Positions 12,287 to 61,683 of a stretch of 64,000 nt of DNA are shown here, piece after piece (position 1 is the first letter of the stretch; each line of letters opens with the position of its first letter). The notes beneath the pieces are model-generated. The model was given only the letters and a program-made list of their open reading frames with translations. It was not told the DNA's origin and searched no databases. The stretch is from the IMG/VR virus record IMGVR_UViG_3300049793_000366, positions 434,001 through 498,000 of that record; one strand, 5' to 3'. The translations under genes and the position numbers were made by a program.

Positions 12287-12318
12287 TTTGCAAATCCGCA
12301 TTTTAATCCGTACATTTG
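12287..12318 (+). promoter_or_regulatory. Bacteroidota-type promoter
   Basis: TTTG-N20-TACATTTG, ATG at 12323. Confidence 0.8.
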
Positions 12319-12322
12319 TAGA

Positions 12323-13045
12323 ATGGAAAAGAGACTCACAACTGAGAACTTACAATATTATGTAGACTACGATTACGACACTAGTTATTCATGTGAAGAT
12401 AGTGGTTGTGATAACGAAGGTATATGTCGTTGTGGTAGCATAGAGAATGCTGTTGTGAATCCTATAAACATATCAGAATTCGCAAAGAAGATGTATGAGT
12501 TATACAATCCACCAACAAAAGATAAAACAATACTTCGTGATAGAAAGATAAAATCTTTATTTGATTCATCAATTGAGGAAATAAATATCTATTGCATCGA
12601 TAGAATTTGTAGAGTACTCAAAGTATGGGACTTGAATAAGTGGGAGGTTAATGTATGTGGTGGTTATTACGGTGATGAAGTAGACTCAGTTAAGTTTGAA
12701 GATGTTGTAAAATTAGCAGAGAAGATAGAAGCTGTTTTAGAATTAAGCTCAGTCAAAGAAAAGATAGAGTATGTGTTAACTGTTGAGTATGGTAGCATTC
12801 TACCAGAGCTTAAAGATAAAGAATATTCATTGATAGAGATATCAAAAGATGATGTTATATTTGGTAGCGAAGGACAATACAAAAAAGTATCAACCGAAGA
12901 CCTTACTCACTATTCAAATAAAGAGTATAGTGGCATAAGAGGTTTGCTTTTACCAAAGGGTGAGAAGTTCAGACTAATCGATGGCTACCACAGAATGTTT
13001 GCCACAAATAACAAAAAGAAAATAAGAGTACTATTAGCACAATGA
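12323..13045 (+). CDS. hypothetical protein with Cys-rich N-terminus, internal C-tag and ParB/Srx-like C-terminal motif
   Basis: CEDSGCDNEGICRCG; LRDRKIKSLF; RLIDGYHR. Confidence 0.7.
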   Translation: MEKRLTTENLQYYVDYDYDTSYSCEDSGCDNEGICRCGSIENAVVNPINISEFAKKMYELYNPPTKDKTILRDRKIKSLFDSSIEEINIYCIDRICRVLKVWDLNKWEVNVCGGYYGDEVDSVKFEDVVKLAEKIEAVLELSSVKEKIEYVLTVEYGSILPELKDKEYSLIEISKDDVIFGSEGQYKKVSTEDLTHYSNKEYSGIRGLLLPKGEKFRLIDGYHRMFATNNKKKIRVLLAQ

Positions 13046-13458
13046 GAATAAGAAAATTAAACAGGTCTGATTATAACTCATATATTTCTTTACTCGACCA
13101 GCTAACAGAAGTTGGTTCAGTAACTAACAGTCAATTCAATCTATACGTTGATAATCAATCTCAGCTACATCAAACATTGGTGTACGAAGAGGACAATCAA
13201 CTATTGGGCTGTCTTACTTATTTCTGCGAACAGAAAGTACATCATTCATTTAGCTACGTTATTCATATCGAAGATGTTGTTACTGACGCTAAACACAGAG
13301 GTAAGGGTGTTGCTAAGACACTCATTGATAATGCTATTAAGATAGCAAAGGCATTCAAGTGTTACAAGGTAATTCTAAATTGTAGCGATAGGAATACGGA
13401 CTACTATAAAAAACTTGGCTTTCAACTAGTTGGTAATCAAATGGTTATAAAGTTTTAG
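13042..13458 (+). CDS. GNAT acetyltransferase, glucosamine-6-phosphate N-acetyltransferase-like
   Basis: HIEDVVTDAKHRGKGVA, CYKVILNC, YYKKLGF. Confidence 0.85.
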   Translation: MRIRKLNRSDYNSYISLLDQLTEVGSVTNSQFNLYVDNQSQLHQTLVYEEDNQLLGCLTYFCEQKVHHSFSYVIHIEDVVTDAKHRGKGVAKTLIDNAIKIAKAFKCYKVILNCSDRNTDYYKKLGFQLVGNQMVIKF

Positions 13459-13463
13459 AAAAA

Positions 13464-13495
13464 TTTGCATATCCGGATTATTATCCGTACTTTTG
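13464..13495 (+). promoter_or_regulatory. Bacteroidota-type promoter with palindromic spacer
   Basis: TTTG-catatCCGGATTATTATCCG-TACTTTTG. Confidence 0.8.
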
Positions 13496-13514
13496 TTAAA
13501 CAAAATCGGACAAT

Positions 13515-14006
13515 ATGCAATTCAAAGACATTCGCTACGCTCAATTACTAATCGAAACAATCCTAAAAGATTCTGGTGCTAACACTGTTAGCTTCGAAAC
13601 TATTGACAATAGAAATGTTTGTGTTGTTAATAATTTCACTGTGTCTATGTTGGCGGTTGATGCCGCAAATCGTAACTTAGAGAAAATGAATATTCGCTTA
13701 GTACAACGTGTTAAAGAAGATAACGGTAGTCGTAAAGACTTCTATGAAATAATCGACTTATCTGTTGTACAAAAGATAAAAGATATCTGTATCACAAATG
13801 GTTGTTCTGATAATTTCAGAATCGATACAAACACCGTATGGGGTGACAGAAACGTTAGTGTTAGCTTACGCTACGGTTACTGGAGAAAGTTAGACGTTGA
13901 TACTCTTAATCCACTATTAAAAGAACTTGGCGTTAAATTAGAATTAGATTCTTTTGACGATGATGATTGTGGTACACAATATACAAATCAAATTATTAAC
14001 CTTTAA
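13515..14006 (+). CDS. hypothetical protein
   Basis: ORF downstream of the promoter. Confidence 0.75.
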   Translation: MQFKDIRYAQLLIETILKDSGANTVSFETIDNRNVCVVNNFTVSMLAVDAANRNLEKMNIRLVQRVKEDNGSRKDFYEIIDLSVVQKIKDICITNGCSDNFRIDTNTVWGDRNVSVSLRYGYWRKLDVDTLNPLLKELGVKLELDSFDDDDCGTQYTNQIINL

Positions 14007-24481: not shown

Positions 24482-24526
24482 ACTTGTTATATTTAGAAAA
24501 ATGAATAGGTTTTTAATATATACGAT

Positions 24527-27569: not shown

Positions 27570-27920
27570 ATGAAAAGACTAATCATCACCGCAGTATTAT
27601 TACTGACAACATTCTTATTGACCTCACAAACCACACAACACTTCAACTTTAAAACAGTTAAGAAAGACACCATCAGCCGTAAAGTAAATACATACGTTAC
27701 GCTCGATAAGACCGCTAAACGCCTTTTTATACAAGATAGTACTCTTCATATGAAGACCACACTTTTCATCACAAGATATTCATTGGCTACCAAATACCAA
27801 CTTATGGACTGCAAAGATTCAGCATCTAAAGAAAGTATCTATGTAGAAGTGTACAAAGGAACCAAAGAATCCTATATGAAATTACAATACGCTAACGACC
27901 AAACCTATATCTACAAATGA
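27570..27920 (+). CDS. putative exported protein
   Basis: Signal-peptide-like MKRLIITAVLLLTTFLLTSQ. Confidence 0.75.
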   Translation: MKRLIITAVLLLTTFLLTSQTTQHFNFKTVKKDTISRKVNTYVTLDKTAKRLFIQDSTLHMKTTLFITRYSLATKYQLMDCKDSASKESIYVEVYKGTKESYMKLQYANDQTYIYK

Positions 27921-28225
27921 TAACACTTACCAAAATGGGTGATAGCTACGTTGTTGTAGAGTCCGATGGTGTACAGTTATGTATCTTAACCACCTCACTC
28001 ACTGTCTACGATAAGAACACACACGAAGCATATAAGAATATTATGCTACTGCTTAACGCAGACCAGCAACAACTTATATTAGGTAAGTTCAAGATAAAGG
28101 AAACAGAACACGATAAACCGTTCGATGATGTGGAATTCATCCGGGATAACCTAATGAACATCGAACACCCAGAATTCTTATTAGTAAGAAGAGACCTAAA
28201 ATTAAGTGAACTAACGAGTGATTAA
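27917..28225 (+). CDS. hypothetical protein, C-tag
   Basis: Ends RRDLKLSELTSD. Confidence 0.75.
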   Translation: MITLTKMGDSYVVVESDGVQLCILTTSLTVYDKNTHEAYKNIMLLLNADQQQLILGKFKIKETEHDKPFDDVEFIRDNLMNIEHPEFLLVRRDLKLSELTSD

Positions 28226-28574
28226 GCAGAAATATAAATACAAACTTAAATATTCAGAAATAAAAGAAACAGACTCAGCTACCAATAGAAACATATTAGT
28301 ATTATCCACCAAAGATGAAGTATTAATAGAATTCATATTAAGTAACTCAATAGAATCAGGTAATAGTAAATACCAATTGAAACGAGCGATATACTTCCTG
28401 AACCAAAGCATTAACCACACAGGCGAGTACGAATACGTTACCATCTGTTGTAGTTATTTGGATGTTGGGATGGATGATATAGACTTCATTGAGTATTACT
28501 TCAACGAATTGATGGATGATGATAAACTTAAACACATTAGAAGACATTTAATAATTGATAAAGCTTTAGAATAA
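28218..28574 (+). CDS. hypothetical protein, C-tag variant
   Basis: Ends RRHLIIDKALE. Confidence 0.7.
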   Translation: MIKQKYKYKLKYSEIKETDSATNRNILVLSTKDEVLIEFILSNSIESGNSKYQLKRAIYFLNQSINHTGEYEYVTICCSYLDVGMDDIDFIEYYFNELMDDDKLKHIRRHLIIDKALE

Positions 28575-28744
28575 TGGAAAAAATTAAAAAAGAACAATTT
28601 GCTGTTTATGAGAAAAAACCAGCTCATCAAAAAGACGTTAATGGTATCATTTTAGCTCCATATAATACCAAAGAAGAGGCTGAAAAAGCTGGTACTAAAT
28701 ATGGTTACTCTGGGGATAACTATTATGTTGATAAATTAATATAG
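28574..28744 (+). CDS. small hypothetical protein (56 aa, absent from ORF track)
   Basis: TAATG-coupled, MEKIKKEQFAVYEKKP...YYVDKLI*, fills the gap. Confidence 0.6.
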   Translation: MEKIKKEQFAVYEKKPAHQKDVNGIILAPYNTKEEAEKAGTKYGYSGDNYYVDKLI

Positions 28745-28746
28745 AC

Positions 28747-28992
28747 ATGAGAGGATTTTGTAAATGTAGAGTAACATTCAAAAAAGATATACACACCTAC
28801 GTTGGTAACCAAATATATGAATACCGTATATATGGTAGTATGTATACCGTTGAGACACCATCACTGCTTAACCCAGATTTAAGTGTCGGGTATCAATTCA
28901 GTCAAAAAGCATTTGATGAGCAATTTGATGAGTTTACCCAGCAACAAATAAGAGAAATGAGATTAGATACCGTATTAAAAGACAATGAGTAA
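28747..28992 (+). CDS. CxC-family small protein, C-tag
   Basis: FCKCRV...GNQIYEY...FDEQF...IREMRLDTVL. Confidence 0.8.
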   Translation: MRGFCKCRVTFKKDIHTYVGNQIYEYRIYGSMYTVETPSLLNPDLSVGYQFSQKAFDEQFDEFTQQQIREMRLDTVLKDNE

Positions 28993-29251
28993 AGAATCAC
29001 AACTAATAGAAGGCTATGAGAATTTCAAAGGCTTTGAAGTAAACTCTATTGTCATATGCGTAGATGCCAAAGATTGCATATCCATCAAAGAAGGTGATGA
29101 GTATACCGTATTGAACCAACCACACTATCATAACATGAGAGGCGTTGGTGTAGAGGTTAGTAGTCCAGGTACTTCTAATTTTTATCATCCAGGTCGATTC
29201 ATCAGTAAAGAAGAACTAAGAAATAAGAAAATCCAAACCATATTAGAATGA
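28985..29251 (+). CDS. small protein, C-tag
   Basis: VICVDA...EGDEYTV...LRNKKIQTIL. Confidence 0.8.
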   Translation: MSKESQLIEGYENFKGFEVNSIVICVDAKDCISIKEGDEYTVLNQPHYHNMRGVGVEVSSPGTSNFYHPGRFISKEELRNKKIQTILE

Positions 29252-29550
29252 CTGTACAATTTCATAGAACAGACACCGAGAAGTTTATACTACTCATCTT
29301 CACTGGTGGATCTCCGCTCGATAACCGCAAAGCTCTGGATAACTACCTAAGCGATTTAAAAGTTGATGATAACGGAGAATATGTAGATTATAACCGCTAT
29401 GACTTCTGTGATATCAAATACTATATGGATGTCTTATGCCTCTTATATAAGAAACCACACAGCTTAAACGATGAAGATTTTGTTGATTATAATAAGAACT
29501 ATCCAACAGCACTGAAAAGAATTAAAGGACTAAATAAATTACTGGTATGA
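29248..29550 (+). CDS. hypothetical protein
   Basis: ATGA coupling; ends RIKGLNKLLV (tag-like). Confidence 0.7.
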   Translation: MTVQFHRTDTEKFILLIFTGGSPLDNRKALDNYLSDLKVDDNGEYVDYNRYDFCDIKYYMDVLCLLYKKPHSLNDEDFVDYNKNYPTALKRIKGLNKLLV

Positions 29551-29741
29551 GCCAACGAATGGAAGAATTTAACTACGTAAGTGGTGGGCATCACAATAAA
29601 TTAATTGTGGTTGATATATTATATATGCTAAAGAAACAAATGCGAACAGAAGCTTTTCATAGACCAATTGAAATAGTATCAGACTCAAAAGAACTTCTTA
29701 TAATCGCGGATTATGTCAAAAACAATAAGATAAAATTCTAA
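29547..29741 (+). CDS. hypothetical protein
   Basis: ATGA coupling. Confidence 0.65.
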   Translation: MSQRMEEFNYVSGGHHNKLIVVDILYMLKKQMRTEAFHRPIEIVSDSKELLIIADYVKNNKIKF

Positions 29742-30002
29742 ATGAAATGTATCTGTCATAACGATTTGCTTGAAGGAACAAGGTCAGCTTTCATCAAAGG
29801 TAACATATATGAATATAGTATCTACAACAACGGTAAAACCATATCACTTGGTGGAACTTTCATTGACTTCGAAGGATTCGAATATGTGGCAGACAAACAA
29901 GCACTATCAATTGATATGTTCACCCATTACTTTAGAGATTTAGAAGAACACAGAGATTTAACCATCAATACACTATTAGAATGGCAATGTACCAAGAAGT
30001 AA
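29742..30002 (+). CDS. CxC-family small protein, C-tag
   Basis: MKCIC...KGNIYEY...FTHYF...HRDLTINTLL. Confidence 0.8.
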   Translation: MKCICHNDLLEGTRSAFIKGNIYEYSIYNNGKTISLGGTFIDFEGFEYVADKQALSIDMFTHYFRDLEEHRDLTINTLLEWQCTKK

Positions 30003-30232
30003 GAGATATAGTTTGCACATCATCCAAACTATACCCACAATATATTAAAGGTAAACACTATCGTGGTAACTTTAGGTTATATTGCTGGGATGTCGTAGAT
30101 GAATACAATAACATGATGAACTATGGTATAGATAAATTCAATGAGTATTTCACCGAGTTAGAAGAATTAAGAGATAATAAGATTAAAACAATATTAGATA
30201 ATGAAGTTCAAACCAATATTCAGCATAGGTGA
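29981..30232 (+). CDS. CxC-family small protein, C-tag
   Basis: IVCT...KGKHY...FNEYF...LRDNKIKTIL. Confidence 0.8.
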   Translation: MAMYQEVRDIVCTSSKLYPQYIKGKHYRGNFRLYCWDVVDEYNNMMNYGIDKFNEYFTELEELRDNKIKTILDNEVQTNIQHR

Positions 30233-30431
30233 CTTAGTATATGTGGACACCAATACAATAGCAACCATTCTAAGAACCCGCGCCAATATAGAATTTCTCA
30301 TCGAATACGAAATGTCAAAGAAATACATCAATATGTCAGCTAAACGAAAATACTGGGTCTATTATGAAGTCTTGGTCAAATATAACACAGGTATCATACG
30401 CGAACAAAAGCTCAATAATCTATTACAATGA
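30201..30431 (+). CDS. small protein, C-tag
   Basis: FSIGDLV...IREQKLNNLL. Confidence 0.75.
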   Translation: MKFKPIFSIGDLVYVDTNTIATILRTRANIEFLIEYEMSKKYINMSAKRKYWVYYEVLVKYNTGIIREQKLNNLLQ

Positions 30432-30661
30432 AAGCAAAATGTATTAAACCAATCATAGATGAATTCGGAGACCATCAAATGGAACTAATACTGAATGAGA
30501 ACTATGAATATAGAATAATACTGACCGATAAACCGGCTGATAGGTTCATTTATAAACTCATCGTAAAAAATAAAGAATATTCATTAACAACAGAGTATTT
30601 CGATAGATATCTACTCGACATAACCATTCATAGAGATAACCAACTCGATACACTATTATGA
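30428..30661 (+). CDS. CxC-family small protein, C-tag
   Basis: MKAKCIK...FDRYL...HRDNQLDTLL. Confidence 0.8.
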   Translation: MKAKCIKPIIDEFGDHQMELILNENYEYRIILTDKPADRFIYKLIVKNKEYSLTTEYFDRYLLDITIHRDNQLDTLL

Positions 30662-30927
30662 GCAAGAAAGAAGAAATATCACTCATCTGTATAGAAGATA
30701 TTGTAGACCTGTTCACCAAAGTCGCACAGTTTAAGAAAGGCATAACCTACAAAGCATTCTTAGACCCACTACACATTGTCTACATCTATAATGAATCAGG
30801 CGCACTCTTCCAAAAGTATAACCTGATGAATACCTATGAACACGATGAATATACAAAACACTTCGAGATACCCTGGAGACACCGCGATAATAAAATAAAC
30901 AATATATTGGAAGAACATGGGAACTGA
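30658..30927 (+). CDS. CxC-family small protein, C-tag
   Basis: LICIED...KGITY...HRDNKINNIL. Confidence 0.8.
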   Translation: MSKKEEISLICIEDIVDLFTKVAQFKKGITYKAFLDPLHIVYIYNESGALFQKYNLMNTYEHDEYTKHFEIPWRHRDNKINNILEEHGN

Positions 30928-31153
30928 ATTAAGAATATGTCGGTGCGTCAATGATGCCTATATCGGTTACCGATTAACTATTGAATATAAATTCAGCGTG
31001 GTGTATGTAAACCAACACGTAGATATCTATCGGGTCTATTTGGAAGATAGGTCAACCTTTAACCATTTCACCAAACTACAATTCAATAAATGCTTCATCG
31101 ATTTAACCGCCATAGAAGAAAGAGATACTAACATTCAAAAAGTATTAGAGTAA
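30917..31153 (+). CDS. CxC-family small protein, C-tag
   Basis: ICRCVN...FNKCF...ERDTNIQKVL. Confidence 0.8.
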   Translation: MGTELRICRCVNDAYIGYRLTIEYKFSVVYVNQHVDIYRVYLEDRSTFNHFTKLQFNKCFIDLTAIEERDTNIQKVLE

Positions 31154-31374
31154 TGGAAAAGGAAGAAGAATTAATCATCCGGTGCATAAAAGACACACCC
31201 AGCTTTTTTAAAGATAAATGCTATAAAGCAGTTATCAATCATATAGACCACGAGATTAACATATTCAGTGAATATTTAAAGGTAGAATTTGAATATCCAT
31301 CCTATTACTTCAATGAACATTTCCAATTAGAATGGCAACGCCGTGACCAAATTATAGACTCAATACTCAAATGA
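31153..31374 (+). CDS. CxC-family small protein, C-tag
   Basis: IRCIKD...FNEHF...RRDQIIDSIL. Confidence 0.8.
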   Translation: MEKEEELIIRCIKDTPSFFKDKCYKAVINHIDHEINIFSEYLKVEFEYPSYYFNEHFQLEWQRRDQIIDSILK

Positions 31375-31631
31375 AAGCAATCTGTATTAAACCCATCATT
31401 GAACACATAAACTGGGAAACCATCACTCTATCCGAAGGAGTCATATATGAGTATGAACTGATGATTGATACCGCCCAAGCCACCTTCGGAAGAGTCTATC
31501 AAGTTATGATAAATAATAACCCATATAGTATGAAACCAGAATTCTTTAACAAACATCTTAAAACCATTGACGAACACCGAGAGAAACAATTAGACAAACT
31601 ATTAAATGAAGATAAAAGCCATCTGTATTAA
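31371..31631 (+). CDS. CxC-family small protein, C-tag
   Basis: MKAICIK...EGVIYEY...HREKQLDKLL. Confidence 0.8.
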   Translation: MKAICIKPIIEHINWETITLSEGVIYEYELMIDTAQATFGRVYQVMINNNPYSMKPEFFNKHLKTIDEHREKQLDKLLNEDKSHLY

Positions 31632-31857
31632 AACATTCAAAGTCGGCTATGGAATCAAAGAATCCAACTTCATCGAAGGGGAAATCTATGACTATGAACG
31701 ACTACTCATCGGTATTATGAATAATGATACCAGAGAATATAGAATACATTCGGGTGATAACCATTTCAAATTAAACCCGCAATTCTTTAAACAACACCTG
31801 ATGGACTTAGAACTATACAGAGAGAAACAATTAAAAGACGTATTGAATGAGCGATAG
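31606..31857 (+). CDS. CxC-family small protein, C-tag
   Basis: KAICIK...EGEIYDY...YREKQLKDVL. Confidence 0.8.
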   Translation: MKIKAICIKTFKVGYGIKESNFIEGEIYDYERLLIGIMNNDTREYRIHSGDNHFKLNPQFFKQHLMDLELYREKQLKDVLNER

Positions 31858-32221: not shown

Positions 32222-32243
32222 TCGAAATTAACCATATTCCACC

Positions 32244-32480
32244 ATGATAACATTTACCAAACAATGCATCTGTATAAACGACAAGAACCCAGTATCACAG
32301 GAACAAACCCTGTTCAGAAAAGGAACCATCTATGGCTACGAATTTATGACAGAAGGTATCTATAAAGACGAATACGTTCTGAGCATTAATACAATGGGTC
32401 TTCCACCAGATATGTTCAACCACTATATGATGGACTTACAAGAATACAGAGAGAAACTACTAAACAACCTAACCGATTAG
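32244..32480 (+). CDS. CxC-family small protein, C-tag
   Basis: QCICIND...KGTIYGY...YREKLLNNL. Confidence 0.8.
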   Translation: MITFTKQCICINDKNPVSQEQTLFRKGTIYGYEFMTEGIYKDEYVLSINTMGLPPDMFNHYMMDLQEYREKLLNNLTD

Positions 32481-32483
32481 AAA

Positions 32484-36073: not shown

Positions 36074-36105
36074 TAAATATACGGATAATATTCCGGATCT
36101 CCAAA
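36074..36105 (-). promoter_or_regulatory. Bacteroidota-type promoter with palindromic spacer
   Basis: TTTG-gagatCCGGAATATTATCCG-TATATTTA. Confidence 0.8.
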
Positions 36106-36626: not shown

Positions 36627-36658
36627 TTTGGTAATACCGGACTTTATCAATATATTTG
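36627..36658 (+). promoter_or_regulatory. Bacteroidota-type promoter
   Basis: TTTG-N20-TATATTTG, ATG at 36663. Confidence 0.75.
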
Positions 36659-36788: not shown

Positions 36789-36789
36789 A

Positions 36790-37993: not shown

Positions 37994-38025
37994 TAAATAT
38001 ACGGATAATAATCCGGATTACCTAA
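37994..38025 (-). promoter_or_regulatory. Bacteroidota-type promoter with palindromic spacer
   Basis: TTAG-gtaatCCGGATTATTATCCG-TATATTTA. Confidence 0.75.
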
Positions 38026-38864: not shown

Positions 38865-38896
38865 TTTGGTTATATCGAATATAATCCGTATATTCG
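38865..38896 (+). promoter_or_regulatory. Bacteroidota-type promoter
   Basis: TTTG-N20(...ATAATCCG)-TATATTCG. Confidence 0.7.
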
Positions 38897-42149: not shown

Positions 42150-42583
42150 TAGTGTATTCTTATATGACCGTGATAATCACCAGCACCATCCCAGAGTGAT
42201 AATTCAAACCACACCTTGTGTCCTTCGCTTTCAATCTTCTTTAGTAATGATTTGGTATGTAGTAACATTTCTTGTTTAGCTCTGAGTACTACCAGTTTAG
42301 CTTCCATCTTTGATTCCCATTCGAATAGAGAAGGACCGCCGGTATCTGGTGTTGGCTTTCTTACGATGAAGTATATGTTCGCTAAATGGATTAGATTCTT
42401 GATTCGTTCTTCTTTGGTGATTGAGAATGGTGACTTACCTTTACAATACCAATGGTCAACGATTGGGTTATATCCTATACTAAGGTCTTTGAATCCTTCA
42501 TGTAGGCTCATAGCATCTTCGAATGATTCTACGATGAGGTTAATGGTTGATTCGAAATCCTTCTGTATTTGTGTGTAGTCCAT
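42149..42583 (-). CDS. hypothetical protein
   Basis: Start moved to MDYTQ after the promoter; LLKKIESEGH. Confidence 0.7.
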   Translation of the reverse strand: MDYTQIQKDFESTINLIVESFEDAMSLHEGFKDLSIGYNPIVDHWYCKGKSPFSITKEERIKNLIHLANIYFIVRKPTPDTGGPSLFEWESKMEAKLVVLRAKQEMLLHTKSLLKKIESEGHKVWFELSLWDGAGDYHGHIRIH

Positions 42584-42589: not shown

Positions 42590-42620
42590 TAAATATACGG
42601 ATAATATTCCGATAACCAAA
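42590..42620 (-). promoter_or_regulatory. Bacteroidota-type promoter with palindromic spacer
   Basis: TTTG-gttatCGGAATATTATCCG-TATATTTA. Confidence 0.8.
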
Positions 42621-43103: not shown

Positions 43104-43778
43104 TTAAACGGTTTCTAATTCGAACTGACAGACCTTTACTTTAAGGTCATTGTATTGATAGATTTTATTCTTCTTCTCAAGGCTTTTGATGTATTCGATA
43201 TACTCAGGTCTTGCTGGTTCATTCTTGTTGAGGTACATATGTTCAATATGTTCTAACTCAGAAAACGATGTTATCTCTGTATCACCGTAACCTATACCAC
43301 CGCTACCTCTGGGTCCGAAGATAGTACTTGGGATAACAGTTGATTCAATCTCATAGGAAGAGTTTAATGTCTCCTTATTGAAATGATAGTCTTGATAGTC
43401 TGAATGATTTATATTGCGACCAATGTGCCATCTGAATCTTCCGATAGCTTTCTTCTTCTCGATGGGTTCTTTATGACCAGCCCAGTTATCAATATAGGTA
43501 ATATGGTCAACACCTTCTAACCTTGCGATAGCGATTTCACGCTGTACTTGCTTATCATCGAATCCCCAGCCGCTTACCTTTAGTTTATTGGTAAAGTTTT
43601 CGAATTCAACCTTTAACTTCATACCATAGACGAATTCAATCAATAGCTCTGCTTCATTACAGTTGATTGGTCTCTGGACATTAAGACTACGTGTATAGCC
43701 TTTAGTTAACAAAGACATATAGAAGTCTTTATGGATGCCCAGCTTGGTCTTAGCTCCTTTATAACAATTATTTTTCAT
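43104..43778 (-). CDS. hypothetical protein
   Basis: Coupled minus-strand ORF. Confidence 0.75.
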   Translation of the reverse strand: MKNNCYKGAKTKLGIHKDFYMSLLTKGYTRSLNVQRPINCNEAELLIEFVYGMKLKVEFENFTNKLKVSGWGFDDKQVQREIAIARLEGVDHITYIDNWAGHKEPIEKKKAIGRFRWHIGRNINHSDYQDYHFNKETLNSSYEIESTVIPSTIFGPRGSGGIGYGDTEITSFSELEHIEHMYLNKNEPARPEYIEYIKSLEKKNKIYQYNDLKVKVCQFELETV

Positions 43779-44031
43779 CAGCTTCGGTAATTAATAGTGA
43801 TAGGTTTATAATCGTTTTATCCTTATTCTTAAAGAACTTCTCTTTGTTATACTCTTTGAACTTCAATGTACTATTCTTCGATGTGTATAACTTATCGTCT
43901 AACTTCTTCGATATCCTATCAATCTCTCTTAATAGTTTATCAGTGAGTACAGTATGCTTAATAGCACACCCATAAGTTCCAACTGGAACGAACCCAAAGT
44001 CTTCAATCAGTGTTAAGAATATATCATTCAT
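43768..44031 (-). CDS. hypothetical protein sharing the N-motif-family core
   Basis: FLTLIEDFG...EIDRISKKL. Confidence 0.7.
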   Translation of the reverse strand: MNDIFLTLIEDFGFVPVGTYGCAIKHTVLTDKLLREIDRISKKLDDKLYTSKNSTLKFKEYNKEKFFKNKDKTIINLSLLITEADEK

Positions 44032-44040: not shown

Positions 44041-44072
44041 TAAATATACGGATAATAATCGATACTACCAAA
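44041..44072 (-). promoter_or_regulatory. Bacteroidota-type promoter
   Basis: TTTG-gtagtatCGATTATTATCCG-TATATTTA. Confidence 0.75.
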
Positions 44073-45116: not shown

Positions 45117-45499
45117 CAGCACCCGAACTAATAGAGTATTTAGAGCGATTGGGATTCATTATGGATTCTTATACCAGTATGATGGAGTTCATCACCCTAC
45201 ATCTACGCGATAAAGATATTGGTGCTAATGTGAATAACCTAAGTGGTGTATCAATAAGTATCTGTAAGAGTAAAGGAGTCTATCATCAACAGTATAGTGA
45301 TAAGCCAAACATATTCAGTATTAAGTATGAGCTAACGGATCATATAGACTTCAATACGAAGATGCCCGTTAGAAGCCATCAGATGAATCACTATACAATA
45401 GATGGTGTGTTGGAGTTCCTCGTAGAGAATCGAATTGGTAAACCGGATGTATTAAGAGAAGCTATCATTGAATTAAACTGCCACAGGCTCTTGAATTAA
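45113..45499 (+). CDS. hypothetical protein ending within repeat copies
   Basis: The last codons (LNCHRLLN*) are encoded by two repeat copies. Confidence 0.75.
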   Translation: MTAPELIEYLERLGFIMDSYTSMMEFITLHLRDKDIGANVNNLSGVSISICKSKGVYHQQYSDKPNIFSIKYELTDHIDFNTKMPVRSHQMNHYTIDGVLEFLVENRIGKPDVLREAIIELNCHRLLN

Positions 45500-45589
45500 A
45501 ATGCCACACCAACTAATTAAACTACCACATCCGAAACCCTTACTGGATAAGACTTAGAATTATAATGCCACACTTAGAAATGTGGATAA
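45471..45589 (+). repeat. second cluster of the 16-bp repeat (4 copies) plus a perfect DnaA box
   Basis: Copies at 45471, 45494, 45515, 45558; TGTGGATAA at 45581-89. Confidence 0.85.
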
Positions 45590-46406: not shown

Positions 46407-46613
46407 TTAGTAATCATCGTCAGAGTCTTCGTCTTCTTCTCTATCATCATCACCCAGTAACGAATCAACTACGTCACCAACGATACCACCCGCACCCCTT
46501 GATACTTCTGTCTCAAATGCGTCTTCGATGAATGAATCATCATGGTCTTTATCAATCGCATCATGTACTTTAGATGCTGTGAATAATCCTGCTAATGCTC
46601 CAAATAATCCCAT
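46407..46613 (-). CDS. small acidic protein
   Basis: MGLFGALAGLF..., Asp/Glu-rich tail; promoter upstream. Confidence 0.7.
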   Translation of the reverse strand: MGLFGALAGLFTASKVHDAIDKDHDDSFIEDAFETEVSRGAGGIVGDVVDSLLGDDDREEDEDSDDDY

Positions 46614-46629: not shown

Positions 46630-46661
46630 TAAATATACGTATAATAATCCGGATCACCAAA
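46630..46661 (-). promoter_or_regulatory. Bacteroidota-type promoter
   Basis: TTTG-gtgatCCGGATTATTATACG-TATATTTA. Confidence 0.75.
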
Positions 46662-46664: not shown

Positions 46665-47342
46665 CTATTTCTTCTTGCTAATTGCTTTCTCGTGCTTGAT
46701 GGTTTGTTCTATCTCTCTTTTAATACCAGACATAAGAGAAGTTGAGTACTCAACGCATTCATATAAGTGAAACGTATTGTCACCCATTTCTTCAATCTTC
46801 TTGAAGTCAGCTAACATATCTAAGTCTTGTTGACTTACCTTACCGTTGAGGTGTTCAAGCATTCTACGTGTAAACGCACTGGAATACTCGTAGGTAAAGA
46901 TAAACCCTTCACTGGTAAAGCTATCAGCTTCTACCTTATAATCTCTTTGCTTGTATTTGGTTAACTCTTTCGATGGGTTATGAAGCTTACGGATATGGAA
47001 CTTACCATTTGCTTTATCATCTATAACAATGATGTGTTGTAGGTTGGGACCGTAGATGGTTTCATCATCGATAACCAACACGTCTAATTCGTCAGTAAGC
47101 TTTAACACCTTACACTTCAATGAATGCTTATCATCGTAGTTCTTGATGCTATTATCGCGGGAGTGCTTGAAGATATAATCAGCAAAGCTTTTAATCTTAT
47201 CGGCTTGTTGCTTAACCATTTCATTGATAACACCTACGAGGAAGTGATTATCTATACCAAAAGCTTTTCTATCATCATACTGTAATGAAATGATTTCTTT
47301 AGCTATGCGCTGTTCAGCTTTTTGACGTTGGTCGAAATTCAT
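46665..47342 (-). CDS. hypothetical protein
   Basis: Start moved to the ATG downstream of the promoter. Confidence 0.75.
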   Translation of the reverse strand: MNFDQRQKAEQRIAKEIISLQYDDRKAFGIDNHFLVGVINEMVKQQADKIKSFADYIFKHSRDNSIKNYDDKHSLKCKVLKLTDELDVLVIDDETIYGPNLQHIIVIDDKANGKFHIRKLHNPSKELTKYKQRDYKVEADSFTSEGFIFTYEYSSAFTRRMLEHLNGKVSQQDLDMLADFKKIEEMGDNTFHLYECVEYSTSLMSGIKREIEQTIKHEKAISKKK

Positions 47343-47363: not shown

Positions 47364-47395
47364 CAAATATACGGATAATATTCCGTATTACCAAA
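47364..47395 (-). promoter_or_regulatory. Bacteroidota-type promoter with palindromic spacer
   Basis: TTTG-gtaatACGGAATATTATCCG-TATATTTG. Confidence 0.85.
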
Positions 47396-48232: not shown

Positions 48233-48264
48233 CAAATATACGGATAATAATCCGGAATATCAAA
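48233..48264 (-). promoter_or_regulatory. Bacteroidota-type promoter with palindromic spacer
   Basis: TTTG-atattCCGGATTATTATCCG-TATATTTG. Confidence 0.85.
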
Positions 48265-48281
48265 TTATAATATATACAACT

Positions 48282-48698
48282 ATGAAACATCTTAGAAGAT
48301 TTAACGAATCAGTAGAATTAGATTATGCTCCAATCTTTACGGAGTTACTTGAAGAAGATTTAGGTGCTGTGGCTATCTTTGATTTAGTAGAGGATTGGGA
48401 AAATGGTGGTGCTGAGTTTTGGTATTTTACAAATGATGAGATGGATGGTGTAAAGGTATCTGATGTAAATGATAAGATAAGTATGACCAAGGATCTATTG
48501 ACTGCTAGTATTCTTGACGCATTAAAGGATGGTACAATAATGGATAACCCATCTAAGGTAATATGTATTGTTTATAACCCTGAGCCAGTAGTACAAGAGC
48601 TAATCGATAAAATAAAACGTAAGTGTGGTAAGGTAAGTACTACAGTAAGAACTGGTACATGGGGTATTTATAGTGAAGAAACAATCCTAATATTCTAA
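48282..48698 (+). CDS. hypothetical protein, N-motif
   Basis: MKHLRRFNE; AATATATA at 48269. Confidence 0.8.
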   Translation: MKHLRRFNESVELDYAPIFTELLEEDLGAVAIFDLVEDWENGGAEFWYFTNDEMDGVKVSDVNDKISMTKDLLTASILDALKDGTIMDNPSKVICIVYNPEPVVQELIDKIKRKCGKVSTTVRTGTWGIYSEETILIF

Positions 48699-51688: not shown

Positions 51689-52042
51689 ATGATACCAAAC
51701 GGAGTACCAGTCAGATGTGCTGATTGTTTTGAATACAAGATAGATTGTATGTGTGATGAAAAAATGATAACAAATTTTATAGAGTTAAACGAAATAAGCA
51801 AGAATATGTTAACAGCAAGAGAAGCCAGAGAAATGTCTGACAAAGCAAACAAATCACTTATAGATACTCAGTATGCTGAGGTGAAACGTATAGTAGAAGC
51901 TACCTCTAAGAGAGGTGAGTATCATACTTACATAGAATTATCACTAAGGGCTGATGTGAAGAAGTTATTAATAGAAGAAGGATTTACTATTGGTGAAAGG
52001 GAATCTCACCGTAATGAATCTCATGTGAAGATATCTTGGTAA
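51689..52042 (+). CDS. hypothetical protein
   Basis: Co-oriented; true start may be MLTAREA. Confidence 0.7.
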   Translation: MIPNGVPVRCADCFEYKIDCMCDEKMITNFIELNEISKNMLTAREAREMSDKANKSLIDTQYAEVKRIVEATSKRGEYHTYIELSLRADVKKLLIEEGFTIGERESHRNESHVKISW

Positions 52043-54794: not shown

Positions 54795-55211
54795 TTAACT
54801 ATTGTATGGTTCATCAATTGATATCCTAACTTGTCTGATAACAAGTGGTACAGCATTACCTAAATTTCTATATTTCTCAGGGTGTTCGGTGATATCCTTA
54901 TGTTTCTTAACTAAATAGTCAAGTGAATTGATATATAATGCTCCGGTAGCCACGAATGATATATACAACCCGTATGCTTTAACCTTCTTTTCAGCGCGAA
55001 GTAACATCTCTACGAACTCATCGGTAACTGTTATATCCATGTTAGATTCATAAAGGAATTGACCATCGTGTAGCTTATCAAATACTAGTCCATAATCATC
55101 AATCAATTCGTTCAAACAAGCATCGATGTCAACACGGTATTTATCCTGTATGGCTCTTATTTCCCTGAACATATCAATCATGTAACCTTCGTATAATTTA
55201 AGATGCTTCAT
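54795..55211 (-). CDS. hypothetical protein, N-motif
   Basis: MKHLKLYEGY; AATATATA upstream. Confidence 0.8.
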   Translation of the reverse strand: MKHLKLYEGYMIDMFREIRAIQDKYRVDIDACLNELIDDYGLVFDKLHDGQFLYESNMDITVTDEFVEMLLRAEKKVKAYGLYISFVATGALYINSLDYLVKKHKDITEHPEKYRNLGNAVPLVIRQVRISIDEPYNS

Positions 55212-55226: not shown

Positions 55227-55258
55227 TTTGCTAATGCGAATTATTGTCCGTACATTTG
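55227..55258 (+). promoter_or_regulatory. Bacteroidota-type promoter
   Basis: TTTG-N20(...TTATTGTCCG)-TACATTTG. Confidence 0.8.
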
Positions 55259-55263: not shown

Positions 55264-55566
55264 ATGAAAAATACTATAACAATCAATAATGATGAGATTA
55301 GTACTCACTTATCATATACTCTTATAGAGAAAGATACCGCCTTTATTGGACACATCACTGCGCTAAATATACCATTCACATCACCTACTAAAGATAAAGC
55401 TTCTGATATTGCTAAAGGTCTTGTAAAAGCTTTATTTCATAAATGGGGAAATACTGGTGGTTTAGAATTAATAAGAGAGAAGATAAAGTCGTTTAATTTC
55501 ACACAGGTATATGATACGCACTACGAATATAGTTTACCAGTACCAAAATCTTCATATCAAATGTAA
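55264..55566 (+). CDS. hypothetical protein
   Basis: ATG after the promoter. Confidence 0.7.
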   Translation: MKNTITINNDEISTHLSYTLIEKDTAFIGHITALNIPFTSPTKDKASDIAKGLVKALFHKWGNTGGLELIREKIKSFNFTQVYDTHYEYSLPVPKSSYQM

Positions 55567-56687: not shown

Positions 56688-56704
56688 TAGTTAATATATA
56701 CTCT

Positions 56705-57988: not shown

Positions 57989-58383
57989 GGTATATGAATC
58001 ATCATGTTTAATACTACGTGTTTATTAACGAAATAATGTAGATTAATATCGGTTATTGGTATAGGCTTTGGATATATCACTCTACCTTTTGTAACTATAC
58101 TAAAGTCTGCTATACCAACTTCTACTTTTAAGTCAAGCTCAGAAAGTTTTTTGAATATCCTTATTACTTCTGACCTAAGCTGAGTTGTAAATATAATCAT
58201 ATCTTCTTCTAATATATTATCATTACTGATATTATTAAACAGTATAGGATCTATCAGTCTTATATAGCGGGAACCATAGCTTCTACCATTTTGATTATAC
58301 TTATCAATATTACTAGTGATGAAGAAGTCATATTCTTCTATAATAGTACTGAGCGTGTTAAATATAACAATACTATTGTTCAT
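57985..58383 (-). CDS. hypothetical protein, tandem paralog of the next gene
   Basis: STIIEEYDF...IRLIDP...EEDMIIFT. Confidence 0.8.
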   Translation of the reverse strand: MNNSIVIFNTLSTIIEEYDFFITSNIDKYNQNGRSYGSRYIRLIDPILFNNISNDNILEEDMIIFTTQLRSEVIRIFKKLSELDLKVEVGIADFSIVTKGRVIYPKPIPITDINLHYFVNKHVVLNMMIHIP

Positions 58384-58766
58384 TATAATCCAATAACCAA
58401 TTTAAGTATTACTCGCTTATTTAAAAATTCATTAAGGTCTACCTCTTCAAATTGTTTTGGTTCTTTAAGCCATGCCATATACATACGAATCATATAGTCG
58501 TCTAAGATTCTAATTTTAACTGGTACTTCAAATTCTAAAAGCTTCTTATAAATCTTTACTACCTCTGACTTCAGTTGTGGTGTAAAGATAATCATATCCT
58601 CTTCTCTTATAGTATCTTCGAATATTACAGTGGAAGCCGGATCTACCAGGCGTATTTCTTTGATTATTTCACCAGCATTCATAATCTGGTGACCACTCAC
58701 ACTGAAATCATACTCTTCTATGAGAGTGCTTATCGCATCTGTTATGGTTTTACCTTTCTCAGTCAT
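58383..58766 (-). CDS. hypothetical protein, tandem paralog of the previous gene
   Basis: STLIEEYDF...IRLVDP...EEDMIIFT. Confidence 0.8.
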   Translation of the reverse strand: MTEKGKTITDAISTLIEEYDFSVSGHQIMNAGEIIKEIRLVDPASTVIFEDTIREEDMIIFTPQLKSEVVKIYKKLLEFEVPVKIRILDDYMIRMYMAWLKEPKQFEEVDLNEFLNKRVILKLVIGL

Positions 58767-58770: not shown

Positions 58771-58802
58771 TAAATATACGGATAATATTCCGGATTACCA
58801 AA
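58771..58802 (-). promoter_or_regulatory. Bacteroidota-type promoter with palindromic spacer
   Basis: TTTG-gtaatCCGGAATATTATCCG-TATATTTA. Confidence 0.85.
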
Positions 58803-59619: not shown

Positions 59620-60041
59620 TACTTGTATTCAGGTTCTATTGTAGAAATTTCATCAAGTTCTTTTTTGTTTTCAACCAACCAAATATTATAAGCTTCCATA
59701 AAGTCTTTATCCTTTAAAGCTTCTTCGAGTGGAAAATCATCACCATTATCATCTACTAATGTTTCGATGTTTAAGAATGCGCGGATGAAGTTAAGGTTGT
59801 CAATACCTTCATCACTTTCCTCTAAGCAATATCCTTTGGTTAAACAAATCCACTCTTCATTATGAATGAACATATTATCACCATCGATAACTTTAAGTTT
59901 ACCTTCTGAAATCAATTCATCGAGTAAGGCACCTAAACCATGTGGTCTAAGTATGTGGCCCGGTAAGCCTTGTCCTGTTTCTTTATACACATCTACTGCC
60001 GCTTTATAAAGCTCTTGTTTTGTCATTTCTACTTGTTCCAT
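59619..60041 (-). CDS. hypothetical protein
   Basis: Coupled minus-strand ORF. Confidence 0.75.
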   Translation of the reverse strand: MEQVEMTKQELYKAAVDVYKETGQGLPGHILRPHGLGALLDELISEGKLKVIDGDNMFIHNEEWICLTKGYCLEESDEGIDNLNFIRAFLNIETLVDDNGDDFPLEEALKDKDFMEAYNIWLVENKKELDEISTIEPEYK

Positions 60042-60749
60042 TTACCAAATTTTAGGATTAATTTCTTTTTGTTGTTTAAATATATCTTGACCAACAGCTA
60101 CCCATTGGTTCCAATTCATTCTAAGTTCTTCTGGGTGATAACCAGTCGCGCTACCGTTATGTCGTGACACATACGACATGATACACTCAGCATGAATAGA
60201 GTGATGATTATATTCGTTCTCACCGCAACCACAGGCAGTGCCTCTACCGTTATTATATTCCCATACGAGTGGAATTAAACCACAGATTTTACATGGCGCC
60301 CATGCGCTTGGATTTGTCACTCGTTTGTATGCTGAGATAGCTTTATAATTCCTACGATGTTCAAGCCATACTTTCATAGACTTAAGCATACCAGCTTTCA
60401 TTTTAACATTACGCTTGGTGATGAAGTTATCAATCTCATACTTATCTGGTATAAGATTGATGAATGTATCGGCATCCATTTCTTGTATCGCCATCACATT
60501 AGAAGCAGTGATTGTAACAGAATCACCAGCAGCTTTTCTATCCTTGAAGAACCGCGCATATTTCAAATCAGTAATACTGTATAGTGTGTCTTTTTTATCA
60601 GGGCTACCACTATCACAGCCCATGAAGAATCGTTTTTCATCTTCATCAAATAAAGCAGATAATTTATTATCGCGCTGACGTTGTTTATCAGTAATCTCTA
60701 TGTAATAGAATATGTCTCTCTTGGTAGAGTAGTATAATTTATTATCCAT
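60042..60749 (-). CDS. hypothetical protein with N-proximal tag and C-terminal Zn-binding region
   Basis: QRDNKLSALF at about residue 25; PCKICG...ACGCG...WN.W. Confidence 0.75.
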   Translation of the reverse strand: MDNKLYYSTKRDIFYYIEITDKQRQRDNKLSALFDEDEKRFFMGCDSGSPDKKDTLYSITDLKYARFFKDRKAAGDSVTITASNVMAIQEMDADTFINLIPDKYEIDNFITKRNVKMKAGMLKSMKVWLEHRRNYKAISAYKRVTNPSAWAPCKICGLIPLVWEYNNGRGTACGCGENEYNHHSIHAECIMSYVSRHNGSATGYHPEELRMNWNQWVAVGQDIFKQQKEINPKIW

Positions 60750-61047
60750 TTATTAATTGTTTGAGCTTTCTATCTCTATTCTCTGGTATATTTATCTTGA
60801 AGTTATCTAAGTTAAAATATGGTTCGCGTTGACCATATACCTCCGTGTGTATTGGTTCATTATGAATCTCATTTAGTACTATACCATACACAACTGTATT
60901 GTCAACTTTTTCTGATATAATATCTCGTATGGTATAAGTTTGTTCATTAACTGGGTACATAACACCTTTCATATCACCAGCCCCTTCAAAGTTTTTATTT
61001 GTAGGTCTTAAATAAGTGACGCTATCTCCTATTTTTATATTAGCCAT
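60742..61047 (-). CDS. small protein (KOW-like start), C-tag
   Basis: IKIGDSV...NRDRKLKQLI. Confidence 0.8.
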   Translation of the reverse strand: MANIKIGDSVTYLRPTNKNFEGAGDMKGVMYPVNEQTYTIRDIISEKVDNTVVYGIVLNEIHNEPIHTEVYGQREPYFNLDNFKINIPENRDRKLKQLING

Positions 61048-61420
61048 TGATTATATTTTCTGCGACTGTTCTGAATAAATCTTCTGCGATTAAATCGTCA
61101 ATAACAATCTCTCTACACTCCTGTTTGAATACTTCTCTGAATCTTTCATTAAGATGATTTCTTCTCCACTCATTATCTGGTGCGAGTTGGAATACACAAT
61201 CTACATTCTCACCAGTTACATTATGATGTGTGTATAAACGATAATCGGCAGTGTCGTAATTGATTTCACTATTGGTATCACCATGACTAAATACAACAAG
61301 TGTGTAGTGTTTATCAACGAAGTAATCTGGGTAGTATTTATACTCTATTGCCCAGCCAGCACCAGGGTGTGTGATACCAATTTGCACGAATCCTATATTA
61401 GTAAACTTCTCTATGAACAT
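61040..61420 (-). CDS. hypothetical protein, C-tag variant
   Basis: CREIVIDDLI. Confidence 0.75.
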   Translation of the reverse strand: MFIEKFTNIGFVQIGITHPGAGWAIEYKYYPDYFVDKHYTLVVFSHGDTNSEINYDTADYRLYTHHNVTGENVDCVFQLAPDNEWRRNHLNERFREVFKQECREIVIDDLIAEDLFRTVAENIING

Positions 61421-61647
61421 AATTTACTCAACTTATAATCTCTGATGAATTCTAATGATAGGTGTATCGTAACTTCAGCGTGTGATGTTAAACCATATCT
61501 ATCACCTGGTCTCAATCTATATTCAACGTGTTGTTTATCGTGTTCTGCTTTTAATTCATCTGGGTTGTAACATTCATATCTACAACCTACGTTACTGATG
61601 CAGTCGATGAACCACTTATCGTCCTTTTTATCTAATCTACCTATCAT
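61411..61647 (-). CDS. hypothetical protein, C-tag
   Basis: Ends IRDYKLSKLCS. Confidence 0.75.
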   Translation of the reverse strand: MIGRLDKKDDKWFIDCISNVGCRYECYNPDELKAEHDKQHVEYRLRPGDRYGLTSHAEVTIHLSLEFIRDYKLSKLCS

Positions 61648-61651
61648 GTCC

Positions 61652-61683
61652 TAAATGTACGGATAATATCCCGTATTACCAAA
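61652..61683 (-). promoter_or_regulatory. Bacteroidota-type promoter
   Basis: TTTG-gtaatACGGGATATTATCCG-TACATTTA. Confidence 0.8.

What the first reader, a model, noticed from the sequence alone, without database searches (positions are those of the whole stretch)
12287..61683. Host-type promoters carry a conserved palindrome between the -33 and -7 boxes
Seen: at least 15 promoters fit TTTG-N19/20-TAnnTTT(G/A). Many have a spacer with the near-palindrome CGGA(A/T)TATTATCCG (13464, 36074, 37994, 42590, 47364, 48233, 58771; degenerate at 44041, 46630, 61652, 38865, 55227). Established: -33 TTTG / -7 TAnnTTTG is the Bacteroides/Flavobacterium housekeeping promoter, whose spacer is normally not conserved. 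Inference: an operator for a dimeric phage regulator that switches early genes off or on in concert, or a mobile promoter unit copied around the genome.
Basis: partly seen in the sequence, partly recalled or inferred. Interest (0 to 1): 0.6.

Follow-up and report, generated by a model that had tools for sequence, protein, structure and literature searches.

The report
Palindromic early-promoter cassettes in huge phage
A roughly 710-kb phage of Bacteroidota carries over a dozen near-identical 33-bp host-type promoters with an inverted repeat between their two boxes; two related phages keep them almost letter for letter while the genes around them shuffle, so they look like movable promoter cassettes with a built-in regulator-binding site.

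Summary
The 14-nt core occurs at 11 sites in the window against 0.6 expected. It always lies inside a TTTG-N20-TAnnTTT(G/A) promoter, which matches 16 times against 1.3 expected. Each promoter points at a gene on the same strand.

Conservation is confined to about 33 bp, and the flanks are at background. The downstream genes are unrelated and almost all have no known family.

In the 508-kb record, strong copies occur only in the last 62 kb. The record is the end of a 711.8-kb contig of a Mahaphage-like phage. Two relatives with 45-83% protein identity and scrambled gene order carry the same unit with an identical core.

At three pairs of orthologous neighbouring genes the unit is present in one lineage and absent in another. 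At two orthologous promoters the arms CCGGA and TCCG are kept while the 6-nt centre varies.

The right arm abuts the -7 box in about a fifth of this phage's other host-type promoters. Neither that word nor the palindrome is enriched in Bacteroidota genomes.

Best reading: compact early-promoter cassettes, often with a leaderless start. They behave like the PeSL cassettes of T4-type phages, and their spacer palindrome is probably an operator. No binder was identified and no expression data could be obtained.

The parts
12287..12318 (+). Weak unit P1: left arm is CCGCA, right arm TCCG is intact. It drives the 240-aa gene at 12323-13045.
   Evidence: PWM score 30.9. Positional orthologues in two relatives have intact CCGGA arms.
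13464..13495 (+). Strong unit P2. It drives the 163-aa gene at 13515-14006.
   Evidence: Exact core match; PWM score 44.7. Orthologous promoters in two relatives keep the arms while the centre varies.
36074..36105 (-). Strong unit upstream of the small ORF 35824-36030.
36627..36658 (+). Degenerate unit: left arm shifted by 1 nt, right arm lost.
   Evidence: PWM score 20.2.
37994..38025 (-). Strong unit whose -33 box reads TTAG. It drives 37564-37977.
38865..38896 (+). Weak unit: left arm is TCGAA and the -7 box ends TTCG. It drives 38901-39092.
   Evidence: PWM score 27.5.
42590..42620 (-). Strong core with a 19-nt spacer. It drives 42149-42583.
44041..44072 (-). Strong unit with left arm TCGA. 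It drives 43768-44031.
46630..46661 (-). Strong unit with right arm TACG. It drives 46407-46613.
47364..47395 (-). Strong unit with perfect 7-bp arms (ATACGGA and TCCGTAT). It drives the 225-aa gene 46665-47342. The link between unit and gene is kept in the 709-kb relative.
48233..48264 (-). Strong unit lying back to back with a TAATATATAC motif (48268-48277, + strand) that faces gene 48282-48698.
55227..55258 (+). Strong unit (arms GCGAA and GTCCG). It drives 55264-55566 and diverges from gene 54795-55211.
58771..58802 (-). Strong unit that fills the whole gap between genes. The ATG of 58383-58766 lies 4 nt after the -7 box. The unit is absent at the orthologous junction of the 709-kb relative.
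61652..61683 (-). Strong unit (left arm ACGGG) with the ATG of 61411-61647 lying 4 nt after the -7 box.

Best explanation
Each unit is a compact promoter cassette read by the host's housekeeping RNA polymerase (Bacteroidota type: -33 TTTG, 20-nt spacer, -7 TAnnTTTG). It often drives a leaderless mRNA, because the ATG lies 4-5 nt after the -7 box. The cassettes head short operons of small unknown genes in a fast-changing region at the end of a ~710-kb phage genome.

The spacer carries a 20-bp imperfect inverted repeat, ATnCGGA-N6-TCCGnAT. Its right arm touches the first bases of the -7 box. I infer that this is the binding site of a dimeric, sequence-specific protein, most likely phage-encoded. 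That protein would switch this set of operons together, most simply by blocking the -7 box once early genes have been expressed.

Because the cassettes are near-identical, they also act as portable modules and as points of genetic exchange. They are gained, lost and re-linked to different genes between related phages, as PeSL cassettes are in T4-type phages.

Shown: the motif, its promoter context, its confinement to one region, its conservation across lineages, and the indels. Inferred: early timing, leaderless starts, protein binding, and repression.
For: - Motif and promoter are far above chance. The 20-nt spacing is strongly preferred genome-wide.
- All strong copies sit in short gaps just upstream of co-oriented genes.
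- Identity is 0.82 inside the unit and 0.29 in the flanks. The downstream genes are not paralogues.
- Strong copies occur only at genome positions 447-499 kb of 508 kb. Left and right arms co-occur only there.
- The same unit with an identical 24-nt core occurs 7 times in 40 kb of a 709-kb relative and 3 times in ENA contigs. Proteins there are 45-83% identical and gene order is scrambled.
- Unit-sized presence or absence is seen at three orthologous gene junctions.
- At two orthologous promoters in three lineages the arms CCGGA and TCCG are kept (5 of 6 and 6 of 6) while the 6-nt centre changes at most positions.
- Dyad symmetry has a permutation p of about 0.02.
- TCCGTANNTTTG is not enriched in 41 Bacteroidales genomes, but occurs 18 times against 3 for the control in the phage. 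The palindrome next to a -7 box is not enriched in 121 Bacteroidota genomes: 14 against 17.
- Genes behind generic host-type promoters are enzymes. Genes behind the second motif, TAATATATAC, are very large unknown proteins plus a head-tail adaptor, which fits early versus late classes.
Against: - No DNA-binding protein could be tied to the site. Of the 90 proteins encoded at 27-64 kb, 85 have no Pfam match. There is no HTH_3 in the 508-kb record. The first genes of the operons have no family.
- The right arm occurs alone next to the -7 box in 12 of 60 strict host-type matches outside the terminal region, and in distant relatives that lack the left arm. It may therefore be a polymerase-read 'extended -7' element rather than half of an operator.
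- In the hyperplastic-region copies the non-symmetric centre TATTAT is invariant, which a simple two-arm operator does not require.
- The symmetry statistic is only moderate.
- The first ~204 kb of the contig could not be searched.
Confidence: 0.5

Rival explanations
1. There is no separate regulator. The whole 33 bp is an optimised promoter read by RNA polymerase itself, possibly after phage modification of the enzyme. TCCG would act as an extended -7 element and the AT-rich spacer would tune DNA shape. On this view the palindromic look is largely coincidental.
For: The right arm TCC(G) abuts the -7 box in 12 of 60 strict host-type matches outside the terminal region. In upstream-of-gene promoters TCC sits there in 14 of 34. 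The centre plus right arm (ATATT-A/T-TCCGTA) recurs in LR756502, which lacks the left arm. The centre TATTAT is invariant yet not symmetric. T4 early promoters also have conserved spacers (own knowledge; review PMC2988021 listed, not read).
Against: The left arm lies about 23-28 nt upstream of the start. For sigma-70-type polymerases no base-specific contacts are known there (established knowledge for E. coli; untested for Bacteroidota). The two-arm form is confined to one region, whereas a polymerase optimum should appear genome-wide. At orthologous promoters the centre drifts while both arms stay. Host genomes show no TCCG preference.
Confidence: 0.25
2. The conserved core is kept mainly as a recombination substrate. 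This could be homologous exchange between cassettes, as proposed for PeSLs, or site-specific crossover by the serine recombinase encoded at 11440-12015. The palindrome would be the crossover site.
For: Units are gained and lost at orthologous junctions, and synteny breaks fall at units. A catalytically intact small serine recombinase with a C-terminal helix-turn-helix lies just upstream of the first two units, in all three lineages. The central dinucleotide is AT.
Against: Symmetry extends over only 20 bp, whereas hix/gix/res-type sites have about 12-bp half-sites (own knowledge). The recombinase's recognition helix is invariant even in lineages whose contigs show no palindromic unit (L081, L082). 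The recombinase gene has its own conserved upstream motif, ATTAAACTGCCACAC, in five lineages. Homologous exchange alone does not explain why the arms are fixed while the 5 nt after the -33 box vary. Inversion between units would leave expression unchanged.
Confidence: 0.12
3. The inverted repeat acts as an RNA or DNA hairpin. It would terminate or attenuate transcription coming from the upstream operon, as PeSL stem-loops do, or be a structured promoter as in phage N4.
For: In tandem operons the unit would be transcribed by read-through, and a U-rich stretch follows the repeat. [quoted passage not shown]
Against: Predicted hairpins are weak: the core alone gives 0 to -7.8 kcal/mol. Whole-unit energies lie within about 1.5 sd of the shuffle mean for 10 of 12 copies. 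The stem has only 4-7 bp with a 6-nt loop. Clear host-type -33 and -7 boxes argue against an N4-type hairpin promoter.
Confidence: 0.05

Closest known systems
PeSL (promoter-early stem-loop) cassettes of T4-type phages (Arbiol et al. 2010, PMC2839356; Comeau et al. 2014, PMC4122927)
   Same: Both are many near-identical host-sigma early-type promoters. Both concentrate in hyperplastic regions rich in genes of unknown function and lie directly upstream of such genes. Both carry an inverted repeat that is often between the two promoter boxes. In both, indels and replacements between related phages are bounded by the cassettes.
   Different: The promoter type here is Bacteroidota -33/-7, not sigma-70 -35/-10. 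The repeat is short and AT-rich with a weak predicted hairpin, not a G/C-rich terminator. There is no Shine-Dalgarno sequence, and the ATG is often 4 nt after the -7 box. The phage clade is different (~710-kb Mahaphage-like). Mini-circles were not tested.
Bacteroidota housekeeping (sigma-A) promoter, -33 TTTG / -7 TAnnTTTG
   Same: Both boxes and a single preferred spacing are present, and the units lie upstream of co-oriented genes.
   Different: Host promoters show no conserved spacer. TCCG next to the -7 box and the CGGA-N6-TCCG repeat are not enriched in the host-phylum genomes sampled.
Dispersed operator regulons of phage repressors (for example P1 C1 operators, lambda-type operators overlapping promoters, phiC31 conserved inverted repeats; recalled from memory, not verified here)
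   Same: Many copies of one short site overlap promoters and would allow concerted control of many operons.
   Different: No cognate repressor has been identified. The site is fused at a fixed register into a whole conserved promoter. The phage looks lytic and huge, and no integrase was seen in the window.
MerR-type operators lying in the promoter spacer
   Same: A dyad sits between the two promoter boxes, and the arms contain the letters TCCGTA and TACGGA.
   Different: The spacer is not overlong: palindromic and generic promoters share the same 20-nt spacing. The arm order is inverted relative to merO (memory). No MerR-family protein was seen among the window's proteins.

Membership tests
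Bacteroidota sigma-A (-33/-7) promoter | -33 TTTG and -7 TAnnTTTG boxes | tested here: met
   16 exact matches in the window against 1.28 expected. All strong units carry both boxes. Exceptions: 37994 has TTAG at -33, and 13464 has TACTTTTG at -7.
Bacteroidota sigma-A (-33/-7) promoter | One preferred spacing between the boxes | tested here: met
   Genome-wide, a 20-nt spacer gives 67 matches against 11-23 for spacings of 17-19 and 21 nt.
Bacteroidota sigma-A (-33/-7) promoter | Transcription start a few nt downstream of the -7 box | not testable with these tools
PeSL cassette | Repeated strong host-type early promoter, concentrated in a hyperplastic region upstream of genes of unknown function | tested here: met
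   Strong copies occur only at genome 447-499 kb. Mean gene size there is about 100-120 aa. 85 of 90 proteins have no Pfam match.
PeSL cassette | Stable stem-loop acting as a terminator or attenuator | tested here: not met
   Core hairpins are 0 to -7.8 kcal/mol. Whole-unit energies lie within about 1.5 sd of the shuffle mean for 10 of 12 copies.
PeSL cassette | Indels or replacements between related phages bounded by the cassettes | tested here: met
   The unit is present or absent between orthologous neighbours at three junctions, and synteny breaks fall at units.
PeSL cassette | Mini-circle formation by exchange between cassettes | not testable with these tools
   This needs reads or PCR on phage DNA.
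Operator of a dimeric DNA-binding regulator | Dyad symmetry with conserved arms and a less constrained centre | tested here: inconclusive
   7 conserved complementary pairs, p about 0.02. At orthologous promoters the arms are kept and the centre varies. In the hyperplastic-region copies, however, the centre is invariant.
Operator of a dimeric DNA-binding regulator | A cognate DNA-binding protein | tested here: inconclusive
   None was identified. Most proteins have no detectable family, so absence is not shown.
Serine-recombinase crossover site (hix/gix/res type) | Site co-occurs with the recombinase whose helix-turn-helix reads it | tested here: not met
   The recombinase recognition helix is invariant in lineages whose contigs lack the palindrome. 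A different motif is conserved upstream of the recombinase gene.
MerR-type spacer operator | Overlong spacer that the regulator must distort | tested here: not met
   The spacing is the same 20 nt as in this phage's other promoters.

The most novel reading that the evidence does not exclude
The palindrome is the operator of a still unidentified regulator that defines a co-ordinately switched regulon of small unknown early genes in the largest known phages (~710 kb, Mahaphage-like). The 40-bp 'promoter + operator + leaderless start' unit is a self-contained module that these phages move about to wire newly acquired genes into that regulon.
Probability: 0.35. Interest if true: 0.6.

Novelty: new variant of a known kind. 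Interest (0 to 1): 0.45.

Why it matters
Nothing is known about how phages of 600-700 kb programme transcription. This locus gives a concrete, testable picture with three elements:
- a host-polymerase promoter class with a phage-specific extension;
- a sub-class of that promoter carrying a two-arm site, confined to the most plastic part of the genome;
- a second, -10-only motif in front of large, probably structural genes.

The locus also extends the PeSL idea, in which conserved promoter cassettes act as the joints of gene shuffling. That idea would now apply beyond T4-type coliphages, to a distant phage clade and a different promoter type.

The 33-bp unit is also a candidate compact strong promoter for Bacteroidota genetics.

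Tried and rejected
**Motif searches elsewhere**
- An exact 21-mer scan of IMG/VR found nothing.
- The same scan of JGI metagenomes and species genomes gave only single, chance-level hits. One lies inside a ClC channel gene.
- The full palindrome is absent from the distant relative LR745206.

**Host-factor idea**
- The palindrome next to a -7 box is not enriched in 121 Bacteroidota genomes.
- TCCG next to the -7 box is not enriched in 41 Bacteroidales genomes.
- A loose pattern does hit 20 IMG/VR contigs (about 10 families), against 1 and 5 for scrambled left arms. These are single copies with unrelated downstream genes. I treat this as a lead only.

**Hunt for a binder**
- Pfam and PHROGs scans of the operons' first genes and of all 144 window proteins found no regulator.
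- HTH_3 and sigma-domain searches of the genome found only one ECF-like sigma, at 112.8 kb.
- A weak winged-helix hit at 51689-52042 has no homologues at all.
- Atlas look-ups of two basic, Cys-rich proteins were uninformative.

**Other ideas and tools**
- The RNA hairpin or terminator idea was set aside because predicted energies are weak.
- Duplication of gene cassettes was rejected: the downstream genes are not paralogues.
- Rfam and tRNA scans of the window found nothing.
- The Whitaker et al. 2017 paper on Bacteroides phage promoters could not be read.
- One pattern search was mis-spaced by 1 nt and is not used.

No alternative genetic code was needed. Coding density is 89% under table 11.
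Full report
**Where the window lies.** The window is bases 434,001-498,000 of a 507,910-bp IMG/VR virus record with 33% G+C. That record is the last 508 kb of a 711,805-bp JGI contig. Its ClpB-like gene is 73% identical at the DNA level to LR745206 and LR756502. Those are 634- and 642-kb phages, in the size group that Al-Shayeb et al. assign to Bacteroidetes hosts and the Mahaphage clade (PMC7162821). Table 11 gives 89% coding density with my own simple gene caller. No other genetic code was used.

- The 14-nt core with up to 2 mismatches occurs at 11 sites, against 0.62 expected.
- It always sits in the same register inside TTTG-N20-TAnnTTT(G/A). That pattern has 16 matches in the window against 1.28 expected.
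- Genome-wide the 20-nt spacing is strongly preferred: 67 matches against 11-23 at other spacings.
- A position weight matrix built from the sites finds strong copies only between genome positions 447,462 and 499,020. That makes 11 in the window, plus one 1 kb beyond it. Six weaker copies lie at 446-508 kb.
- Every strong copy lies in a short gap immediately upstream of a co-oriented gene. Several fill the whole gap between a stop codon and the next ATG.
- The ATG is often 4-5 nt after the -7 box, in this phage and in its relatives. This implies leaderless mRNAs if transcription starts where it does in Bacteroidota promoters. That step is an inference.

**It is a 33-bp unit, not a longer repeat.**
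- Mean pairwise identity per column is 0.82 within the unit and 0.29 in both 60-nt flanks.
- The downstream genes are not paralogues.
- Almost none of them has a known family.
- Inside the unit, the five bases after the -33 box vary freely. CGGA, TATTAT, TCCG and the boxes are nearly fixed.
- So the similarity reflects selection on particular positions, not recent copying of a block.

**Relatives.** The 342-aa protein downstream of the unit just outside the window has homologues at 61% and 64% identity. One is on a 709,085-bp NCBI contig (JAWVHH010000009.1). The other is on ENA contigs.
- Forty kilobases of the first carry 7 strong and 3 weak units. The ENA contigs carry 3 strong units. All share the 24-nt core from ATCCGGA to the TTT of the -7 box.
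- Proteins in the region are only 45-83% identical and their order is scrambled.
- Junction 1: this phage has a 41-bp unit between the 110-aa and 342-aa genes, where the ENA lineage has a 2-nt gap.
- Junction 2: the ENA lineage has a unit after the 345-aa gene, in front of the orthologue of a gene that has no unit upstream of it in this phage.
- Junction 3: this phage has the unit at 58771 in front of a gene that, in the 709-kb relative, overlaps its upstream neighbour by TAATG.
- One link between unit and gene is conserved (47364 with the 225-aa gene), while the gene upstream of the unit differs.
- This is the behaviour described for PeSL cassettes of T4-type phages. Their stem-loops are often placed between the two promoter boxes (PMC2839356, PMC4122927).

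**Is the palindrome a binding site?** Four arguments favour it.
- The two-arm form is confined to one region. Outside it, arms occur singly, and only 1 of 60 promoters has both.
- The two promoters just downstream of the serine recombinase gene are positional orthologues in three lineages. They keep CCGGA (5 of 6) and TCCG (6 of 6) while the 6-nt centre changes at most positions.
- The conserved consensus has 7 complementary pairs about the centre GGAATA|TTATCC, with a column-permutation p of about 0.02.
- The left arm lies where sigma-70-type polymerases make no known base-specific contacts (established knowledge for E. coli).

Four arguments count against it, or complicate it.
- TCC(G) abuts the -7 box in 12 of 60 strict host-type matches outside the terminal region, and in 14 of 34 promoters lying directly upstream of genes.
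- TCC(G/T) also abuts the -7 box in LR745206 and LR756502, and in LR756502 the centre plus right arm recurs. Neither has the left arm.
- The right arm may therefore be a phage-specific 'extended -7' element that the palindrome was built on.
- The non-symmetric centre is invariant in the hyperplastic-region copies.

The right-arm word is phage-specific rather than host-general. It occurs 18 times against 3 for the control in the phage, with no excess in 41 Bacteroidales genomes. The palindrome next to a -7 box shows no excess in 121 Bacteroidota genomes: 14 against 17.

**Other readings.**
- Hairpin: predicted hairpins are weak.
- Serine recombinase: the gene at 11440-12015 is intact (RVST motif, C-terminal helix-turn-helix) and syntenic in five lineages. 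Its recognition helix is invariant even where no palindromic unit is present. It also has its own conserved upstream motif.
- No other DNA-binding protein could be tied to the site.

**Context for timing.**
- A second motif, TAATATATAC preceded by T's, has 41 exact copies. Of these, 37 lie within 150 nt upstream of a gene start, and there is no -33 box.
- Ten genes behind it are very large unknown proteins plus a head-tail adaptor.
- Genes behind generic host-type promoters include RNA ligases, peptidases, an ATPase and a phosphatase.
- The phage encodes one ECF-like sigma factor.
- This fits host-type promoters as early or middle and the second motif as late. It remains an inference.

**Limits.**
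- The first ~204 kb of the contig and most of the relatives' genomes could not be searched.
- The host is unknown beyond the phylum.
- Gene calls for small ORFs come from my own heuristic.

**Verdict.** The feature is real and under strong selection. It is best described as a Bacteroidota-phage counterpart of PeSL promoter cassettes with a probable operator in the spacer. That makes it a new variant of a known kind.

Noticed in passing
G000:C1, whole record; in the window for example 24514-24523, 38382-38391, 48268-48277, 56692-56701: A second promoter-like motif, TAATATATAC preceded by T's and with no -33 box, has 41 exact copies, 37 of them within 150 nt upstream of a gene start. The ATG is often 3-4 nt or about 20-30 nt downstream. 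It precedes very large unknown proteins and a head-tail adaptor, so it may be a late class read by the phage sigma factor.
   Followed up: partly
window 11394-11419, 34708-34830, 35031-35160, 35367-35392, 36128-36153, 36774-36799, 45462-45572: Thirteen direct copies of TTAAA-n-T(G/A)CCACA occur, all on the + strand and partly in tight arrays. One copy, ATTAAACTGCCACAC followed about 10 nt later by ATATAA, lies just upstream of the serine recombinase gene in five lineages. These may be the recombinase's own sites or a third promoter type.
   Followed up: partly
whole record G000 / JGI contig Ga0497410_0000003: The IMG/VR 'provirus' record of 507,910 bp is the end of a 711,805-bp contig, and a relative sits on a 709,085-bp contig. 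If these are whole phage genomes they are close to the largest reported (735 kb), and the provirus trimming may be an artefact. A Logan contig extends 142 bp past the contig end.
   Followed up: partly
G000:C1, whole record: Several palindromic hexamers are almost absent from 508 kb: ACCGGT 2, AGGCCT 1, AGCGCT 1, TGCGCA 0, ACGCGT 1. I estimate about 40 expected from base composition. TCCGGA has 70 copies. This looks like avoidance of restriction sites.
   Followed up: no
window 27900-34250: A tandem array of about 25 ORFs of roughly 60-120 aa on the + strand shares DNA repeats near the gene ends, encoding motifs like YREEQI-x-x-LL (families D3, D5, D10, D12). It looks like a diversifying family of small proteins.
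   Followed up: no
window 13496-13517 and the orthologous leaders L079:11400-11418 and L080:11699-11722: The leader of promoter P2 keeps TCGGACA a few nt before the ATG in three lineages. GGAC(A) also follows the -7 box or precedes the ATG at several other units. It could be a start-site preference or an extra half-site.
   Followed up: no
G000:C1:112839-113327: One ECF-like sigma factor is encoded, in a 209-aa open frame with Sigma70_r2 and r4_2 domains. It is the only sigma domain found above the family cut-off in the record.
   Followed up: no
IMG/VR loci L025, L026/L043, L031, L033, L034, L038: Other viral contigs of 28-44% G+C each carry one promoter of the form TTTG-N6-CGGA-N6-TCCGTA-NN-TTT, several with longer arms (TACGGA and TCCGTA). 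There are 20 such contigs against 1 and 5 for scrambled left arms. The architecture may be more widespread in phages with this promoter type.
   Followed up: partly
window 1-12000: A conserved block upstream of the plastic region is syntenic in the relatives: CoaBC-like DFP, microbial PARG, R2K ATP-grasp, radical SAM, a ClpB-like double AAA+ protein (8219-10348), DUF1653, DUF6794, then the recombinase. In one Flavobacteriales-labelled contig the ClpB gene is split by an inserted ORF.
   Followed up: no
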